Virus record (IMG/VR): IMGVR_UViG_3300049048_000052
Coordinates: 1 to 64,000 of that record
Reading direction: 5' to 3' (one strand)
DNA: 64,000 nucleotides
The notes under the pieces were generated by a model that was not told the DNA's origin, searched no databases, and saw only the letters and a list, made by a program, of their open reading frames with translations. How positions within the stretch are numbered: the stretch's first letter is position 1; each line of letters begins with the position of its first letter. The translations under genes were made by a program, and so were the position numbers. Below, in pieces: positions 1-58,043 of this stretch.

Positions 1-639
1 GAATGGAGCATCACTCGTTGGAGCTGAGGATAGTACTCTCTCGATATTGGGGTTCTGTAGGTTGTTCTTGAAGGTTTGTAAGCTCTTAGGTACATAAGTA
101 ATACCTTCAGCAACACCTTCCCAACGTACAGCAGCAACCCTTCTACCAGGCATAATACCTAGGGAGACAGAGTCAACCTTACAACGCTGCAGTTCATACC
201 TGCCTTGAACCTGAGGGTTCTTGAGACCAGCCTGACCAGTCTGAGCTTGGGTAACAACGTTAGCATTACCGTAGTTAGCAAAGGGAGAGATCTGTCTAGA
301 ACCTAGTCTATACTTTTGGCCTTCGCTCTGAGCATAGTTAGTATCTAGGTCATTAGCATTCGCGTCGAATGCAATCTGAAACCTAGGACCTCGGGTAATC
401 ACCTGGTCCCTGGCAATCCTTCTAAGACCAAAGGTACGCATGACAAAGCTCATATCAACTAAGCCTTGTTCAAGCACCCAGGCAATCTGGATTTCACCGT
501 TTAGATAGATAGGAACTCTTTGTCCTAGTTCCAAGTAGGTTTCCGTAGCATCTCTAATAGAGAGGGTAAGAGACTGGAATCTACCGAAGAAGGCAACGTT
601 ACCCTCAACAGAATCTTGTGCCCATACTTCAAAGTCAAA
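1..639 (-). CDS. Tail tube protein, exon 2 (runs off window start)
   Basis: Not in the ORF track. Open frame of 213 codons, FDFEVWAQDSVEGNVAFFGRFQSLTLSIRDATETYLELGQRVPIYLNGEIQIAWVLEQGLVD.... Joined to exon 1 it gives DPLQG|FDFEVW, the DPxxxFxF start typical of gp19-like tubes. Lies downstream of the sheath gene. Confidence 0.8.
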
Positions 640-877
640 CTAGTTGTTAACGTAGAGGCTCTTTATCCTCTACTTCTCATAGTTTCCTATGAGTCCAGAC
701 TATATCATAGTAACCTAATGGTTACCGCCCCCGCTCGTGCCAACTTATCCTGTTCTAGGTATTGTTGGTAGTCGTTGAACCTTACTCCCATCCCGGAGAG
801 TCTTGGCTGCTGATTGCCATATCTATGTAGACTTAGGGTCCCAGCAGTTCAAGGGCTTTATACAGAGCCTTAACTTA
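640..877 (-). mobile_element. Group I intron (no internal ORF) in tail tube gene
   Basis: Minus strand has P (GAACTGCTGGGA), Q (AATCAGCAGCC), R (GTTCAACGACTA) and S (GATATAGTC) elements in order. Exon 1 ends in U and pairs with the guide GCTCTGTA (U.G at the splice site). The intron ends in G, and its removal restores the frame. Confidence 0.92.
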
Positions 878-937
878 ACCCTGTAGTGGATCGATACCCA
901 CGTTGTTGACCGGAGCCTTATACAGGTCTAAAGCCAT
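878..937 (-). CDS. Tail tube protein, exon 1 (MALDLYKAPVNNVGIDPLQG)
   Basis: ATG at 937 after AAGGAA SD-like sequence; 20 codons, then an in-frame TAA inside the intron. Confidence 0.85.
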
Positions 938-1031
938 TTTAAATGTTCCTTTTAATAAAGTTAACTATTATATACCAGGGGTATTAGGTATTAGTGTAGA
1001 TAGAACTAGACCTATAACTCTAAATCAATAA

Positions 1032-1841
1032 ATGACATATATACAATCTATAACAATAAGGGCATGCCCCTCCTGCAATAGCGAGGATACCGTATTAAAA
1101 GGTAGAACCCCTGATGATAGACAGATCTTTAAATGTAAAGCCTGTGGTAAGAAAACTACTGAGAATAAGAGAGTCAGAGGTAGTAGGGTATTCAATCTAT
1201 CAGAGTTGCTACCCTTACACCTTAAACTTCATACTAACCTGAATAATGGGGAGCTATATAGCTTAGGCGTCTTAATAGCTGATGGGTCTATATCCAAGAC
1301 AGGCCAAATGAGTATAACCCTCCAAGAAAGGGACCAGGATATATTAACTACTATAAGAAAATGTCTGTGTATAGATAACCAGGTTAGGAGTGTGGACTGT
1401 TACTACTCCTATAAAGGAAAGAAGATAACTAAGAGCTATAAGAGATTAACCTGGGCCAATAGATACTCCACTAAATTCTGGGAGTACTTTGGTCTCATAA
1501 ATGGTAAGACTGGTAATGAGCAGTGGTTACCTTATATGAATAACACACACTTTGTTAGAGGCTTTTTAGATGGGGATGGGGGTATGTGTATAAGTAGAGG
1601 GTATATAAGACTATACTTCTCATGCCCCTGCTTAAACTTTATAGGTAAGTTACGTCTATATATAAACGAGCTTATTAAGAATATGGGTAGTATGACCTTC
1701 TCTAAAGGCTGCTATAACCTTCAGTATCATGGTGAGCATGCTTTAAATTTAGCCTCAATCCTTTACAAAGGTAGTGAAGGTATTAGATCAGACCGTAAAT
1801 ATGAAATCTATTATGATTACCTCATAGGTAACTACAAATAA
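1032..1841 (+). CDS. Free-standing LAGLIDADG homing endonuclease with N-terminal Zn ribbon
   Basis: Two LAGLIDADG helices (YSLGVLIADGSI, FVRGFLDGDGGM) plus CPSC..CKAC InsA-like zinc ribbon. Confidence 0.88.
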   Translation: MTYIQSITIRACPSCNSEDTVLKGRTPDDRQIFKCKACGKKTTENKRVRGSRVFNLSELLPLHLKLHTNLNNGELYSLGVLIADGSISKTGQMSITLQERDQDILTTIRKCLCIDNQVRSVDCYYSYKGKKITKSYKRLTWANRYSTKFWEYFGLINGKTGNEQWLPYMNNTHFVRGFLDGDGGMCISRGYIRLYFSCPCLNFIGKLRLYINELIKNMGSMTFSKGCYNLQYHGEHALNLASILYKGSEGIRSDRKYEIYYDYLIGNYK

Positions 1842-1866
1842 AAAAGAGGGTCCATATGGACCCTCT
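1840..1866 (-). terminator. Intrinsic terminator after sheath gene
   Basis: AGAGGGTCC-ATAT-GGACCCTCT followed by a T run on the minus strand. Confidence 0.75.
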
Positions 1867-1888: not shown

Positions 1889-4384
1889 CTAGTCCCCGAT
1901 CTGTATACCGCCAGTACTATTACGTACTAGGGTGATATAGATATAATCTGCAGCATATACAGGTAGGAAGCTAATTTGCACATTCAGTCTACCTGCTAGG
2001 TAATCTTCCTGCGTATTGTTAGAACTATCAATAACAGCAGGTAGGTAATTGGCCAGCTGACCGCCTCTAGTTAGAGAGCTTAGATAAGCATTGATAGAGG
2101 TAGCAATCTGAGACCTTAGCAAGGGAGTATTGGTCTCACTCTTATATTGCTGTAGGTTCTGGAATAAGTCCTGACGGATCAGGTCATATATTCTTCTAAT
2201 AGCCACCTTCTCAAAAGCGGTACCTGAGGATAACGTTCTACCGTTAATAAAGTAGAAGCCAGCCTGAGTTTGATCAAGGGCAAGGATTTCTAGTCTTGCA
2301 TCCGTATACAGTTGGAGGCTCGCCTTAGAGTTAAAGCGGGTATCTACTTCAAATATAGACTGGACAGGACCTGCAGTGGTTCTAGCATTGGGACCTACTT
2401 GTACAGGTATAACTGCTAGCTTACCTGCGTATAGACCATCAGGGGCCATACCAAATCTAGTAGCGTTAACCTGACCTGCATAGGTAGACCAACCTGTAAT
2501 CATAACACCTCTCTTAGAGTCAAAGCCAGAGGTTTCTTGTCTAGCTACATTAGGTGACAATCCAGGTCTTGTATTAGTAATAGCAATCCTTAGACCTTCT
2601 AGTTCATGGGACTTATCTGCCTGATTTATAAGTCTCTGCTTGACAGCCCTAGACTTATACTGACCTGCAGCTAGTATGATATGAACTGGATACTCAGCCA
2701 TAGTGTCTATAGCTTTAATGTAATCAGCATCAGTAATATCTGGACCGTCAAATCCATTCTCAAGAGTTATCTCTCTTAGGTAATCAGGGCCGTAGTAGTT
2801 AGGATGTGCTGGATCTGTGGGATCCGTAATAGTGGTGTCAGGAGGCGCTATCCTTTGGGGCGAGCTGTATAGTAACTGAGCATTATAACCATCAGGGTTA
2901 AAGTACTTAGGTACAAATACGCCTCTTATTAGAACTGAAGTAGATAAAGCATTAATGAAACCATTTTCATCAATGGCCCTATCCTCAGCTAAATCTATAA
3001 CATAGTTCTCAGGTAGTTGAGCAGGGTTATACTTATCCCCATTAGTATCCTCAACAGTTAGACTGAAAGAGCTAGCAGTTAAAGGATATACACTAACCTT
3101 TAATGAGTTACCCCAACCTCCTACAGAGGCTGCGGCTAACCTAAGAATAGGTAGACCGTTCATATTATAGAACTCTCTAAAGGCAGTTCTAGGGCCATCC
3201 TCACCACCACTCATAAAAGTAGTGTTAGCGGATGTGAATGAGGTAACCGATAGACCTGAAGAATTAGAGAAACTGAATGTAGCTGTACCAGAGCCTGCGC
3301 CGCTATCAAGGGACTTATTAAGGGTGATAACCCCAGTGCTAGTATTAACAGACTGCACTAAAGTATTACTCTGTAGAACACCACTAATGTTAGTGGTTAC
3401 AATAGCACCTGGGCTAATGTAACCTGCATTACTAGTAGGTGTAACGGTTATAGTGGTAGTAGAATTAGAGTAGTTATAAGAAGCACTAGAGCCCACGGCC
3501 CCATCAGGAACCTGAAGCTCAAAGTAATATGAGAAGTTGTTACCAGCATTACCTACATAGGCTTCCTCAAGATAGAAGCTTATCCCAGTGTCGTCATCCC
3601 TTCTCACAATATCACCAAAGGGTGAATTGCCTGATAGAGTATTCATTAAGGCGGTACTAACTTGGCTAGTGGTAGCGTCCTTAAATATAGGCGTTTGGAA
3701 CAAGAAGCTCTGTACCCTAACGGACCACTCTTGATTTAACACTAAGGCTATATCAGATGTTTGTGTGATAGTACCGAAGATCAAGGATATACCCTGGGAT
3801 ATAGCCTTAGCCACACCCTTATCCGTGGATAAGCCTACACTAATAGAAGTGCTGACCGCAGACCAATCAATATTGGGATCTCCAAAGACATCAGGAATGT
3901 CTAGCAAGCTAATAAACTGATACTTAACAGTAGCAGTAGTAGAGTTTATAGCGGTAACCTTGAAGTAGTATCTACCTGCATCAGTACCAGTATAGCTGCC
4001 TGTGGTAAATATAGGGGTTTTAAGTACTGTACCGTATCTTGGGTAGGCCTGGCCAACATACTTGACATTGGTGGTTAGGTTGTTAGGCTTAGAGGCGACA
4101 CCTGCAAATACAACGGAGCCAAAAGCTTCCTTGGCTAAGCCCATAACTCTGACTATGCCAAAGTCTACTGCACCTTGATCAAAGGCTGCTTGGACTGCCA
4201 TGGATCCCTTAGCTAGATCGCTACCGAATCTATGGGCAAAATCCATAAAGTCGTTTACATAGTTGAATTGGTTAGCGGGCCCCTTAGTGAATTCTCCCAC
4301 CACCCCAATCCTATTCCTAAGTCCGAACCTGATTGGGTTGGTTCCGACATTCTGTTCGTTAAATATGATATCGGGGATTAACAT
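1889..4384 (-). CDS. Tail sheath protein
   Basis: N-terminal GVVGEFTKGP..DF..RFG and C-terminal IRRIYD..NTPLLR..IDSSNNT.ED..GRLNVQI sheath signatures. Confidence 0.93.
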   Translation of the reverse strand: MLIPDIIFNEQNVGTNPIRFGLRNRIGVVGEFTKGPANQFNYVNDFMDFAHRFGSDLAKGSMAVQAAFDQGAVDFGIVRVMGLAKEAFGSVVFAGVASKPNNLTTNVKYVGQAYPRYGTVLKTPIFTTGSYTGTDAGRYYFKVTAINSTTATVKYQFISLLDIPDVFGDPNIDWSAVSTSISVGLSTDKGVAKAISQGISLIFGTITQTSDIALVLNQEWSVRVQSFLFQTPIFKDATTSQVSTALMNTLSGNSPFGDIVRRDDDTGISFYLEEAYVGNAGNNFSYYFELQVPDGAVGSSASYNYSNSTTTITVTPTSNAGYISPGAIVTTNISGVLQSNTLVQSVNTSTGVITLNKSLDSGAGSGTATFSFSNSSGLSVTSFTSANTTFMSGGEDGPRTAFREFYNMNGLPILRLAAASVGGWGNSLKVSVYPLTASSFSLTVEDTNGDKYNPAQLPENYVIDLAEDRAIDENGFINALSTSVLIRGVFVPKYFNPDGYNAQLLYSSPQRIAPPDTTITDPTDPAHPNYYGPDYLREITLENGFDGPDITDADYIKAIDTMAEYPVHIILAAGQYKSRAVKQRLINQADKSHELEGLRIAITNTRPGLSPNVARQETSGFDSKRGVMITGWSTYAGQVNATRFGMAPDGLYAGKLAVIPVQVGPNARTTAGPVQSIFEVDTRFNSKASLQLYTDARLEILALDQTQAGFYFINGRTLSSGTAFEKVAIRRIYDLIRQDLFQNLQQYKSETNTPLLRSQIATSINAYLSSLTRGGQLANYLPAVIDSSNNTQEDYLAGRLNVQISFLPVYAADYIYITLVRNSTGGIQIGD

Positions 4385-50857: not shown

Positions 50858-50929
50858 ACAGGATTAGTTCAGTGTTAGCAGAACATCCCCTCTAAAGGGA
50901 CAAGATAGGTTCAATTCCTATGTTCTGTT
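50858..50929 (+). tRNA. tRNA with CUA (amber) anticodon, atypical
   Basis: TCCC-CTCTAAA-GGGA anticodon arm (4 bp), ATAGG-TTCAATT-CCTAT T arm; D loop lacks GG. Confidence 0.65.
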
Positions 50930-51519: not shown

Positions 51520-51591
51520 GCAGATATAGCTCAAAGGTAGAGCATATGGACGTTTGTTCATAAGATGTAGGTTCGACCCCTACTATCTGCT
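51520..51591 (+). tRNA. tRNA-like gene with 8-nt anticodon loop (Asn GTT-derived?)
   Basis: GCAGATA/TATCTGC acceptor, GCTC-AAAGGTA-GAGC D arm, loop ACGTTTGT, GTAGG-TTCGACC-CCTAC T arm. Confidence 0.7.
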
Positions 51592-57970: not shown

Positions 57971-58043
57971 CCAAGGTTGGCCGAGCGGTTGAGGCAGCAA
58001 ACTCATAATTTGCCCTAGGCAGGTTCAACTCCTGCACCTTGGA
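57971..58043 (+). tRNA. tRNA-CAU (Ile2 or Met), canonical
   Basis: CCAAGGT/ACCTTGG, GCAAA-CTCATAA-TTTGC, GCAGG-TTCAACT-CCTGC; no encoded CCA. Confidence 0.92.

What the first reader, a model, noticed from the sequence alone, without database searches (positions are those of the whole stretch)
640..877. Self-splicing group I intron interrupts the tail tube gene
Seen: P/Q/R/S elements, a U.G splice-site pair, a terminal G, and frame restoration to DPLQG|FDFEVW; the ORF track misses the tube gene entirely. Established: phage group I introns mostly sit in DNA-metabolism genes and less often in virion genes. Inference: tail assembly depends on splicing of a minimal 238-nt intron.
Basis: partly seen in the sequence, partly recalled or inferred. 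Interest (0 to 1): 0.7.

Follow-up and report, generated by a model that had tools for sequence, protein, structure and literature searches.

The report
Group I intron in tail-tube gene
A 238-base group I intron, of the kind that usually splices itself, does split the tail-tube gene of this uncultured 252-kb cyanophage-like virus, right beside a stand-alone homing-endonuclease gene. It is a new example of a known kind of element, but sister phages carry 33-56-base remnants of such introns that keep only the guide sequence.

Summary
Confirmed. On the minus strand, window 877..640 is a 238-nt group I intron with no ORF (Rfam RF00028, 71.8 bits against a cut-off of 50). It follows codon 20 of the gene just downstream of the tail sheath gene. 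Removing it joins ...DPLQG to FDFEVW..., as in uninterrupted homologues. The closest relative (77% aa identity) has an empty site whose gap is exactly these 238 bases. The last exon base is U, paired with G, and the intron ends in G. Intron nt 4-17 pair with 14 consecutive bases of the ligated exons (P1 plus P10). P3-P9.1 are kept in eight related introns through compensatory changes. The protein has a tail-tube fold.

Unspliced mRNA stops at a UAA at intron nt 1-3, so making the tube protein needs splicing. Splicing itself is not shown, because no RNA data hold this phage.

A LAGLIDADG endonuclease gene (1032..1841, opposite strand) lies 155 nt from the insertion site. A homologue accompanies every intron-bearing tube gene examined.

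There is precedent: phage Twort's tail-tube gene (orf142) has three group I introns. The verdict is therefore a new member of a known kind.

In sister phages the same 100 bases of the gene hold up to five interruptions. Some are 33-56-nt mini-introns with no catalytic core.

The parts
878..937 (-). Exon 1 of the tail-tube gene: ATG at 937 and 20 codons (MALDLYKAPVNNVGIDPLQG). Its last 8 nt (885..878, UACAGGGU) form the exon strand of P1, and U878 is the 5' splice-site U.
   Evidence: translation; homologues begin MALDLY..PVNN.GIDP.QGFDFE. (pairing).
640..877 (-). Group I intron, 238 nt, with no ORF. It starts UAA (an in-frame stop) and ends in G at 640.
   Evidence: RF00028, 71.8 bits. (the empty-site alignment gap equals these bases)..
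861..874 (-). Internal guide sequence, intron nt 4-17. Nt 10-17 (GCUCUGUA) pair with the end of exon 1 (P1, with U.G at the splice site). Nt 4-9 (GUUAAG) pair with the first six bases of exon 2 (P10).
   Evidence: 14 contiguous pairs, reached by 1 of 2000 shuffles; the same register in L073.
850..856 (-). P3 5' strand (GCCCUUG). It pairs with 733..727. Only 4 nt separate it from P1, so there is no P2.
   Evidence: P3 is kept in 9 introns with seven different sequence pairs..
808..846 (-). The P4-P5 domain: P4 5' strand 846..841 (element P), P5 hairpin 838..817, P4 3' strand 813..808 (element Q).
780..806 (-). P6/P6a hairpin.
769..779 (-). J6/7 and the P7 5' strand (element R, UUCAACGACUA). GACUA at 773..769 pairs with UAGUC at 702..698 to form the guanosine-binding helix.
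   Evidence: matches the Rfam consensus; invariant in the 9-intron alignment.
740..768 (-). Hairpin between P7 and P3' (P7.1/7.2-type extension, with a conserved CUAGAACAG inner loop). This extension is the mark of subgroup IA.
727..733 (-). P3 3' strand (CGGGGGC).
709..726 (-). P8 hairpin.
   Evidence: eight different stem sequences among the relatives.
697..708 (-). J8/7 and the P7 3' strand (element S, AUGAUAUAGUCU).
653..693 (-). P9 hairpin with a GAAA loop (693..676) and P9.1 hairpin with the conserved loop AUAAAGAG (672..653).
1..639 (-). Exon 2 of the tail-tube gene (213 codons, FDFEVWAQDS...). It runs off the contig start. Its first six bases (639..634, UUUGAC) form the exon strand of P10.
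   Evidence: phrog_34837, E 1e-72, profile positions 24-220..
1032..1841 (+). Free-standing homing-endonuclease gene on the opposite strand: 269 aa with an N-terminal zinc ribbon and two LAGLIDADG motifs (..LIADGS.., ..FLDGDGG..). It fills most of the 951-bp gap between the sheath and tube genes.
   Evidence: Zn ribbon, weak LAGLIDADG_3. (phrog_4645 endonuclease, 1e-20); homologues at the same place in all intron-bearing loci.
1845..1866 (-). Palindromic hairpin followed by a T-run on the minus strand: a terminator-like site after the sheath gene. It suggests the tube gene is transcribed separately here.
1889..4384 (-). Tail sheath gene (831 aa), the upstream neighbour. It supports the tube assignment by synteny.
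   Evidence: Phage_sheath_1C, Phage_sheath_1. (phrog_30392). (Ma-LMM01 gp091/gp092).

Best explanation
Window 877..640 (minus strand) is an intact 238-nt group I intron with no ORF. It is of subgroup IA type: it has a P7.1/7.2-like hairpin and no P2. It lies after codon 20 of the tail-tube gene of an uncultured 252-kb phage related to the Ma-LMM01 group of cyanophages.

Inferred mechanism. In the pre-mRNA, intron nt 10-17 pair with the last eight exon-1 bases, placing U878 opposite G. A free guanosine bound in P7 attacks after U878. Intron nt 4-9 hold the start of exon 2 (P10), the terminal G640 takes the guanosine site, and the exons are ligated to GGU|UUU, restoring ...DPLQG-FDFEVW.... Ribosomes on unspliced RNA stop at the UAA formed by intron nt 1-3. 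Tube protein, and hence tail assembly, therefore requires splicing.

The intron has no endonuclease of its own. It is inherited together with the free-standing LAGLIDADG endonuclease gene 155 nt away (1032..1841, opposite strand). That enzyme most likely cuts tube genes that lack the insertion, while the intron both interrupts the site in its own genome and is copied along during repair (collaborative homing).

Shown: the anatomy, the exact insertion, conservation and covariation of the helices, the tube fold, and the co-occurrence with the endonuclease gene. Inferred: catalysis, timing, and the endonuclease's target.
For: RF00028 scores 71.8 bits against a cut-off of 50. Exons 1 and 2 join to the sequence of uninterrupted homologues. 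The empty site in the closest relative, L081, has an alignment gap that equals 877..640. There is a 14-bp P1+P10 guide, a U.G pair and a terminal G. An orthologous intron with the same guide sits at the same site in L073, a phage whose tube protein is only 62% identical. P3, P5, P6, P7.1, P8, P9 and P9.1 are kept with different sequences in 9 related introns. The fold z-score is -3.6. UAA falls at intron nt 1-3. For the tube fold and synteny. LAGLIDADG homologues (30-47% identity) lie upstream on the opposite strand in all 9 intron-bearing lineages, against 1 of 40 intron-free IMG/VR loci; Fisher p = 5e-9, with biased sampling. Precedents: Twort orf142 (PMC11878797); F-CphI with the psbA intron, and T4 mobE (PMC6083498, PMC2790892).
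Against: There is no RNA evidence. Only two DNA runs hold this phage. Runs holding a relative gave no spliced joint. No experiment has been done. Two loci have the endonuclease homologue but an uninterrupted tube gene: L033, and L081 where the catalytic motifs are lost. The pairing is therefore not obligatory. The endonuclease gene's opposite orientation is unusual for phage free-standing endonucleases (from my own knowledge). No Pfam or PHROG tube family matches the protein by sequence.
Confidence: 0.88

Rival explanations
1. The intron is genuine but does not splice by itself. It needs a protein cofactor or active translation of exon 1 to fold, so 'self-splicing' would fail in vitro.
For: The intron is small and lacks P2, with few peripheral stabilising domains. 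T4 introns need translation for efficient splicing in vivo (Sandegren & Sjoberg 2007, cited in PMC8541194).
Against: All core helices and the J6/7, J8/7 and P7 consensus are intact. Group I introns of similar size are known to self-splice (from my own knowledge; not checked here).
Confidence: 0.2
2. The LAGLIDADG gene and the intron are independent selfish elements that happen to sit in the same hot spot. The endonuclease then neither targets the tube gene nor mobilises the intron.
For: L033 and L081 have the endonuclease homologue without an intron. Intron positions differ between lineages while the endonuclease gene's position is constant.
Against: Co-occurrence is 9 of 9 against 1 of 40. 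The closest endonuclease (47%, L073) accompanies the only intron at the same site as the window's. The many different interruptions within 100 bases next to the endonuclease gene are what repeated selection to destroy a cleavage site would produce.
Confidence: 0.3
3. The interrupted gene is not the major tail-tube protein but another tube-fold tail component, such as a tube initiator or baseplate-proximal paralogue.
For: At about 235-270 aa the protein is larger than typical 140-170-aa tube proteins, and it has no sequence match to named tube families. L036 carries two paralogues in tandem.
Against: The gene lies directly after the sheath gene in more than 40 loci, with no other tube candidate in between. 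The best fold hits are major tube proteins.
Confidence: 0.12
4. The intron is a dead relic and the tube gene a pseudogene in a defective or misassembled genome.
For: It is a metagenomic contig, and the gene runs off the contig start.
Against: The core is intact and the exon reading frames are conserved. The same arrangement occurs in an independent assembly, L073/L074. CheckV completeness is 100%. The tube is an essential virion protein (established knowledge of tailed phages).
Confidence: 0.03

Closest known systems
Staphylococcus phage Twort orf142 introns (Landthaler & Shub 1999). orf142 was later recognised as the tail-tube gene (PMC11878797).
   Same: Small subgroup-IA-type group I introns without ORFs, in a myovirus tail-tube gene. 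In sister loci of the window there are several introns in one short gene, as in orf142.
   Different: The phage lineage is unrelated (a cyanophage-like jumbo phage) and so is the tube protein family. The window has a single intron, flanked by a free-standing LAGLIDADG gene. Splicing has not been tested.
Cyanophage S-PM2 psbA intron with the free-standing endonuclease F-CphI, and T4 mobE/I-TevIII (collaborative or trans homing; PMC6083498, PMC2790892)
   Same: An intron without an ORF next to a stand-alone homing-endonuclease gene. The intron would disrupt the enzyme's target and be co-converted with it.
   Different: The enzyme here is LAGLIDADG-type with a zinc ribbon, not EndoVII-like or HNH. 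It is encoded on the opposite strand, upstream of the target gene. Cleavage has not been shown.
[quoted passage not shown]
   Same: A phage group I intron of subgroup IA in a protein-coding gene, with the same conserved P4, P6 and P7 sequence blocks. The 20-mer GGCAATCAGCAGCCAAGACT is shared with 22 IMG/VR contigs.
   Different: Those introns sit in nucleotide or DNA metabolism genes and carry their own endonuclease ORF. This one is in a virion gene and has no ORF.
Small degenerate group I introns (56-81 nt) of fungal nuclear SSU rDNA, in Phialophora and lichen fungi (PMC3160393). Relevant to the mini-introns of the sister loci only.
   Same: Very short insertions that keep P1, P10 and the terminal G but lack most of the core.
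   Different: The fungal ones keep a P7 and sit in rRNA. The phage ones are 33-56 nt, sit in a protein-coding gene, show no P7, and always lie within about 150 nt of a full-length intron.
T4 gene 60 50-nt coding gap with the mobA endonuclease (from my own knowledge, not retrieved here)
   Same: A short untranslated insert in an essential phage gene next to a free-standing homing endonuclease. It is thought to protect the site.
   Different: In gene 60 the gap is bypassed by the ribosome between matched codons. The phage mini-inserts have no matched take-off and landing codons, one splits a codon, and all have group I-type boundaries and guides.

Membership tests
Group I catalytic intron (Rfam RF00028) | Covariance-model score above the curated gathering threshold | tested here: met
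   71.8 bits against a threshold of 50, E 2.9e-16. Repeated in the whole-genome search.
Group I catalytic intron (Rfam RF00028) | P1 helix between the 5' exon end and an internal guide, with a U.G wobble at the splice site | tested here: met
   UACAGGGU pairs with GCUCUGUA, 8 bp, with U878 opposite G.
Group I catalytic intron (Rfam RF00028) | Terminal G at the 3' end, and P10 pairing with the 3' exon | tested here: met
   G at 640. UUUGAC pairs with GUUAAG directly 5' of the P1 guide.
Group I catalytic intron (Rfam RF00028) | Conserved core P3-P9 with the P7 guanosine-binding helix, supported by covariation | tested here: met
   All helices are found. P3, P5, P6, P8, P9 and P9.1 keep their pairing with different sequences in 9 relatives. 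The J6/7-P7 and J8/7-P7 blocks are invariant.
Group I catalytic intron (Rfam RF00028) | Guanosine-initiated self-splicing | not testable with these tools
   No RNA run holds this phage. Reads laid on a relative were inconclusive.
Subgroup IA | Extra helices P7.1/P7.2 between P7 and the 3' strand of P3 | tested here: met
   A 29-nt composite hairpin at 768..740, conserved in the relatives. The finer subgroup (IA1, IA2 or IA3) was not resolved, and P2 is absent.
Mobile intron with an intron-encoded homing endonuclease | An endonuclease ORF inside the intron | tested here: not met
   The 238 nt hold no plausible ORF. The only one listed is a 51-aa TTG ORF on the other strand.
Collaborative homing pair (ORF-less intron plus free-standing endonuclease) | An endonuclease gene adjacent to the intron-bearing gene, co-occurring with the intron across lineages | tested here: met
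   The gene lies 155 nt from the insertion site. Co-occurrence is 9 of 9 intron-bearing lineages against 1 of 40 intron-free loci. Exceptions: L033 and L081.
Collaborative homing pair (ORF-less intron plus free-standing endonuclease) | The enzyme cleaves the intron-less allele at or near the insertion site and spares the intron-bearing one | not testable with these tools
   This needs a cleavage assay.
LAGLIDADG homing endonuclease (for ORF 1032..1841) | Two LAGLIDADG motifs with their acidic residues; family profile match | tested here: inconclusive
   Both motifs are visible, with D retained. Pfam LAGLIDADG_3 is below its cut-off (17.5 against 22.5 bits). PHROG endonuclease matches at 1.4e-20. 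Homologues in other loci carry precomputed LAGLIDADG_1/_3 hits.
Phage tail tube protein | Tube fold (beta-sandwich with a long hairpin) and a gene position directly after the sheath gene | tested here: met
   The model (pLDDT 75) gives 54 PDB hits with E <= 1e-3, almost all tube proteins, with TM by target 0.55-0.67. Synteny.
Phage tail tube protein | Sequence match to a named tube family | tested here: not met
   No Pfam family matches, and phrog_34837 has 'unknown function'. There is no PDB sequence hit.

The most novel reading that the evidence does not exclude
The window's intron may be the catalytically complete member of an intron family that repeatedly lost its ribozyme core in sister phages. 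What remains there are 33-56-nt mini-introns in the same 100 bases of the tube gene. They keep only the 5' U, a 10-14-nt guide that pairs with both exon ends, and the 3' G. If they are removed by group I chemistry, the catalytic core must be lent by a full-length intron of this family, on the same pre-mRNA or in trans. That would be a natural shared-ribozyme splicing system in a virus, and a group I parallel to the proposed path from group II introns to the spliceosome. No mini-intron was detected in the window's own genome.
Probability: 0.4. Interest if true: 0.9.

Novelty: new member of a known kind. Interest (0 to 1): 0.6.

Why it matters
For annotation: gene callers miss or truncate this essential virion gene. 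About one in six database homologues is called without its N-terminus for the same reason.

For biology: it adds a second, unrelated phage lineage in which the tail-tube gene holds group I introns. It also ties them to a conserved free-standing LAGLIDADG endonuclease, giving a testable case of collaborative homing in cyanophage-like jumbo phages.

The family context is the more valuable part. The first 34 codons of this gene are a hot spot with seven distinct insertion sites. Full introns and core-less derivatives occupy the same sites in different phages. This allows direct tests of how introns decay, and of whether one ribozyme can serve several guide-only introns.

Tried and rejected
- **Megablast against phage records:** no match.
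- **PDB sequence search with the family profile:** no hit.
- **Pfam and PHROGs on distant homologues, to obtain a 'tube' name:** nothing beyond phrog_34837, function unknown.
- **First structure model (36 sequences):** too poor, pLDDT 56, with mixed hits. It was replaced by an 83-sequence alignment.
- **RNA evidence:** only two soil-metagenome DNA runs hold the window. Four runs were probably DNA. Two true metatranscriptomes held unspliced pieces and no reported spliced joint. The exons between the interruptions are only 25-50 nt, so joints could be missed. The result is inconclusive.
- **Ribosomal bypass (T4 gene 60 type) for the short inserts of sister loci:** rejected. There are no matched take-off and landing codons, one insert splits a codon, and all have U...G boundaries with covarying guides.
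- **Scan of the window's whole genome for guide-only mini-introns** (U...G, 28-65 nt, guide run of 10 or more, ORF restored): no excess over a parallel-pairing control, 98 against 87 hits.
- **One covariance model of the full-length intron:** not attempted, because calibration would probably exceed the time limit. I compared helices directly instead.
- **ARAGORN on the two weaker own-genome intron hits:** it did not find interrupted tRNA genes.

Full report
**1. What is at 640..877**

The gene is on the minus strand. An ATG at 937 opens 20 codons (MALDLYKAPVNNVGIDPLQG, 937..878). From 639 downwards a 213-codon frame begins FDFEVWAQDS and runs off the contig start; the window is bases 1-64000 of a single 251,780-bp contig.

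Rfam's group I intron model matches the minus strand at 71.8 bits (gathering score 50, E 2.9e-16). It is one of five RF00028 hits in the genome. The reported span (968..676) is shifted. The model's P1/P2 part is spread with low confidence over the 5' exon and leader, and the model ends at P9, upstream of a P9.1 hairpin and the 3' tail.

The true boundaries come from comparison. 192 homologues were found. The uninterrupted ones read MALDLY..PVNN.GIDP.QGFDFE.W.QD without a break. In the closest one (P0001, 77% identity, locus L081) the DNA alignment has one gap, exactly 877..640.

**2. Anatomy (for coordinates)**

Intron nt 10-17 (GCUCUGUA) pair with the last eight exon bases (UACAGGGU), and the splice-site U878 lies opposite G. 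Nt 4-9 (GUUAAG) pair with the first six bases of exon 2. Together these are 14 contiguous pairs across the ligated junction, reached by 1 of 2000 shuffles.

Four nucleotides later P3 begins, so there is no P2. The following elements come next:
- P4/P5/P4' at 846..808
- P6/P6a at 806..780
- the R block and P7 5' strand at 779..769
- a 29-nt hairpin between P7 and P3' at 768..740, the subgroup-IA hallmark
- P3' at 733..727
- P8 at 726..709
- the S block and P7 3' strand at 708..697
- P9 with a GAAA loop at 693..676
- P9.1 at 672..653
- a 13-nt tail ending in G640

The strand folds better than shuffles (z = -3.6). There is no endonuclease ORF inside.

**3. Comparative support**

I collected eight related full-length introns, 63-72% identical to this one. 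They come from tube genes of other phage contigs and from another phage gene.

Compared helix by helix, P3, P5, P6a, P7.1, P8, P9 and P9.1 are present in all, with different sequences. P3, for example, is GCCCUUG/CGGGGGC here, UCCUGUG/CGCAGGA in L073, CUAUGUG/UGCAUAG in L007 and UUGGGUG/CGCCCAA in L076. The J6/7-P7 and J8/7-P7 blocks are invariant.

L073, from an NCBI assembly and also seen in an independent run, has an intron at the same site (QG|FDFE) with the same P1 guide. Its tube protein is only 62% identical.

**4. The host gene**

The upstream gene (1889..4384) is the tail sheath. In Ma-LMM01 the homologue gp092 starts 4 bp after the sheath gene gp091.

No Pfam, PHROG-named or PDB sequence match exists. 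A model built on 83 diverse homologues (pLDDT 75) gives 54 PDB matches with E <= 1e-3. Almost all are tail-tube, contractile-injection-system tube or pyocin/diffocin tube chains. The nearest named Atlas clusters are tube families.

I take it to be the major tube protein, with a probability of about 0.85.

**5. Consequence of the intron**

The first three intron bases are UAA, in frame. Unspliced mRNA therefore yields a 20-residue peptide. Exon 2 has no start codon near its beginning, and the N-terminal residues are nearly invariant in the family. Tube synthesis therefore depends on splicing. This is inference from sequence.

No RNA data hold this phage. Reads laid on a relative were uninformative.

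**6. The neighbour**

Between sheath and tube there are 951 bp here, instead of about 4-150 bp in most relatives. They hold an opposite-strand ORF (1032..1841, 269 aa) with a zinc ribbon and two LAGLIDADG motifs. A terminator-like palindrome follows the sheath gene.

Homologues of this ORF (30-47% identity) occupy the same place and orientation in every intron-bearing tube locus that has enough upstream sequence. That is nine lineages, counting the window. Among 40 intron-free IMG/VR loci only L033 has one. Fisher p = 5e-9, but the intron-bearing loci were found by a separate route and the lineages are related.

The endonuclease closest to the window's (L073) goes with the only intron at the same site. 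L081, the intron-free closest relative, keeps a homologue that has lost both acidic motifs.

This fits the collaborative-homing arrangement known from S-PM2 psbA/F-CphI and T4 mobE (PMC6083498, PMC2790892). Cleavage has not been tested.

**7. Comparison with what is known**

Phage group I introns are common in nucleotide-metabolism, polymerase and terminase genes. This genome itself has one in thyX, with an HNH ORF.

In virion genes they are rarer, but there is a direct precedent. [quoted passage not shown]

The window's feature is therefore a new member of a known kind, in a new lineage and with a LAGLIDADG partner.

**8. What the relatives show (outside the window)**

About 20 of 120 database homologues are called without their N-terminus. 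In the seven independent loci I could read (L007, L009, L064, L075-L078), the first 34 codons are interrupted at up to five places per gene. Seven distinct sites are used across the set, counting the window's.

Thirteen interruptions are full introns of 225-783 nt. Fifteen are only 33-56 nt long, contain stop codons, and have no core helices. All 28 follow a U and end in G. Removing them restores the conserved peptide, as checked against the empty-site twin L033.

Each short insert contains, near its 5' end, a 10-14-nt guide complementary to the ligated exons, in the same P10-P1 register as the full introns. For most, at most 5 of 2000 shuffles reach the observed run; two have 8-nt guides that are not significant.

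Eight guide positions show two-sided compensatory changes. These usually track synonymous changes in the exon. For example, the third base of the Ile codon is A, U or C, opposite U, A or G in the guide. The U.G pair at the splice site never varies.

At two of the three mini-intron sites, another phage has a full intron at the same position with a similar guide (L075, L076). The minis therefore look like core-deleted derivatives. Every gene with a mini also has at least one full intron within about 150 nt.

Ribosomal bypass does not fit (see Tried and rejected). The nearest precedent is the 56-81-nt degenerate group I introns of fungal rDNA, which keep P1, P7 and P10 (PMC3160393). I found nothing similar for phages or for protein-coding genes in the searchable literature.

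My reading is that a neighbouring full intron's core excises them. This is unproven. A scan of the window's own genome found no such inserts above background.

**9. Verdict**

The observation and the interpretation are both upheld, apart from the untested word 'self-splicing'. The intron is an ordinary kind of element in an unusual but not unprecedented gene. The family around it is the interesting part.

Noticed in passing
L007:3584-3748; L009:3283-3450; L064:2673-2724; L075:2355-2390; L076:2902-2952; L077:2499-2662; L078:1737-1900: Fifteen 33-56-nt inserts in the 5' end of tube genes of sister phages. Each follows a U and ends in G, carries stop codons, and lacks all core helices. Each keeps a guide that pairs with both exon ends, with compensatory changes at eight positions. 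They look like core-deleted group I introns that would need a ribozyme supplied by a neighbouring full intron.
   Followed up: partly
L077:2206-3010 (also L009:3023-3985, L064:2352-2995): The first 34 codons of the tube gene are an insertion hot spot. L077 has five interruptions (MALD | MYGA | PVNNAG | IDPLQGF | DFECWA | QDTHTG). Across loci seven distinct sites are used, by full introns in some phages and by mini-inserts in others.
   Followed up: partly
Own genome, outside the window: G000:C1:164510-164742 (+), locus L002: A stronger group I intron hit (92 bits) lies in a thyX gene. Pfam Thy1 matches both exon ORFs, and an HNH_3 endonuclease ORF runs into the intron core.
   Followed up: partly
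Own genome: G000:C1:179772-180031 (+), locus L005: A sub-threshold RF00028 hit (29 bits) follows a 222-aa HNH-like ORF. It appears to interrupt a dUTPase-like gene (exon ORF L005:484-912 ends ...SVGVIDFEQQ). The family assignment is by eye only.
   Followed up: no
Own genome: G000:C1:130487-130728 (+) and 120925-121155 (+), loci L004 and L006: Two more RF00028 hits (67 and 27 bits) are followed by tRNA T-arm-like sequence (GGTTCGAATC). This suggests intron-containing tRNA genes. ARAGORN did not call them, and I could not find the 5' halves.
   Followed up: partly
window 1..12 and the contig end (G000:C1:251700-251780): The tube gene runs off the contig start. Joining the contig ends as a circle extends the frame 27 codons through a terminator-like hairpin (ACTGTCC..GGACAGT followed by a T-run). 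A few bases are therefore probably missing or extra at the junction, and the true C-terminus is uncertain.
   Followed up: partly
L081:2210-2908 (-): The closest intron-free relative keeps a homologue of the endonuclease gene (31% identity). Both LAGLIDADG acidic motifs are replaced (..LARAV.., ..YEASVN..). This looks like a decaying endonuclease next to an empty site.
   Followed up: partly
L033:2074-2865 (-) and L033:3001-3726 (+): An apparently intact LAGLIDADG homologue sits next to an uninterrupted tube gene. It is a near twin of L064, which has three interruptions. This is a useful natural empty-site control, and a question: how does L033 avoid cutting itself?
   Followed up: partly
L015:192-431 and L026:884-1121: A closely related intron (64% identical to the window's) interrupts another phage gene. 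Its exon peptides (...ETYQAIGNREDLANTI | YNISPSD...) resemble a major-capsid-protein motif. This is from memory and was not tested.
   Followed up: no
L076:2101-2883 and L009:3470-3982: Two enlarged full introns in tube genes. L076's holds a 179-aa ORF on the antisense strand. L009's has an AT-rich insertion of about 280 nt after P7 that splits the Rfam hit in two.
   Followed up: no
L078:1845-1865: The exon between mini-inserts 2 and 3 has one extra base (ATCGATGCCCATG, where ATCGATCCCATG is expected). This shifts the frame. It is either an assembly error or a real +1 shift.
   Followed up: no
L036:2146-2844 and 2968-3789; L037:2088-2906 (-): Other fillings of the sheath-tube gap. L036 has a divergent tandem paralogue of the tube gene. 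L037 has an unrelated 272-aa opposite-strand ORF, part of which resembles the C-terminal extension of the L073 endonuclease ORF.
   Followed up: no
window 50858-50929, 51520-51591, 57971-58043 (+): Three tRNA genes found by Rfam elsewhere in the window.
   Followed up: no
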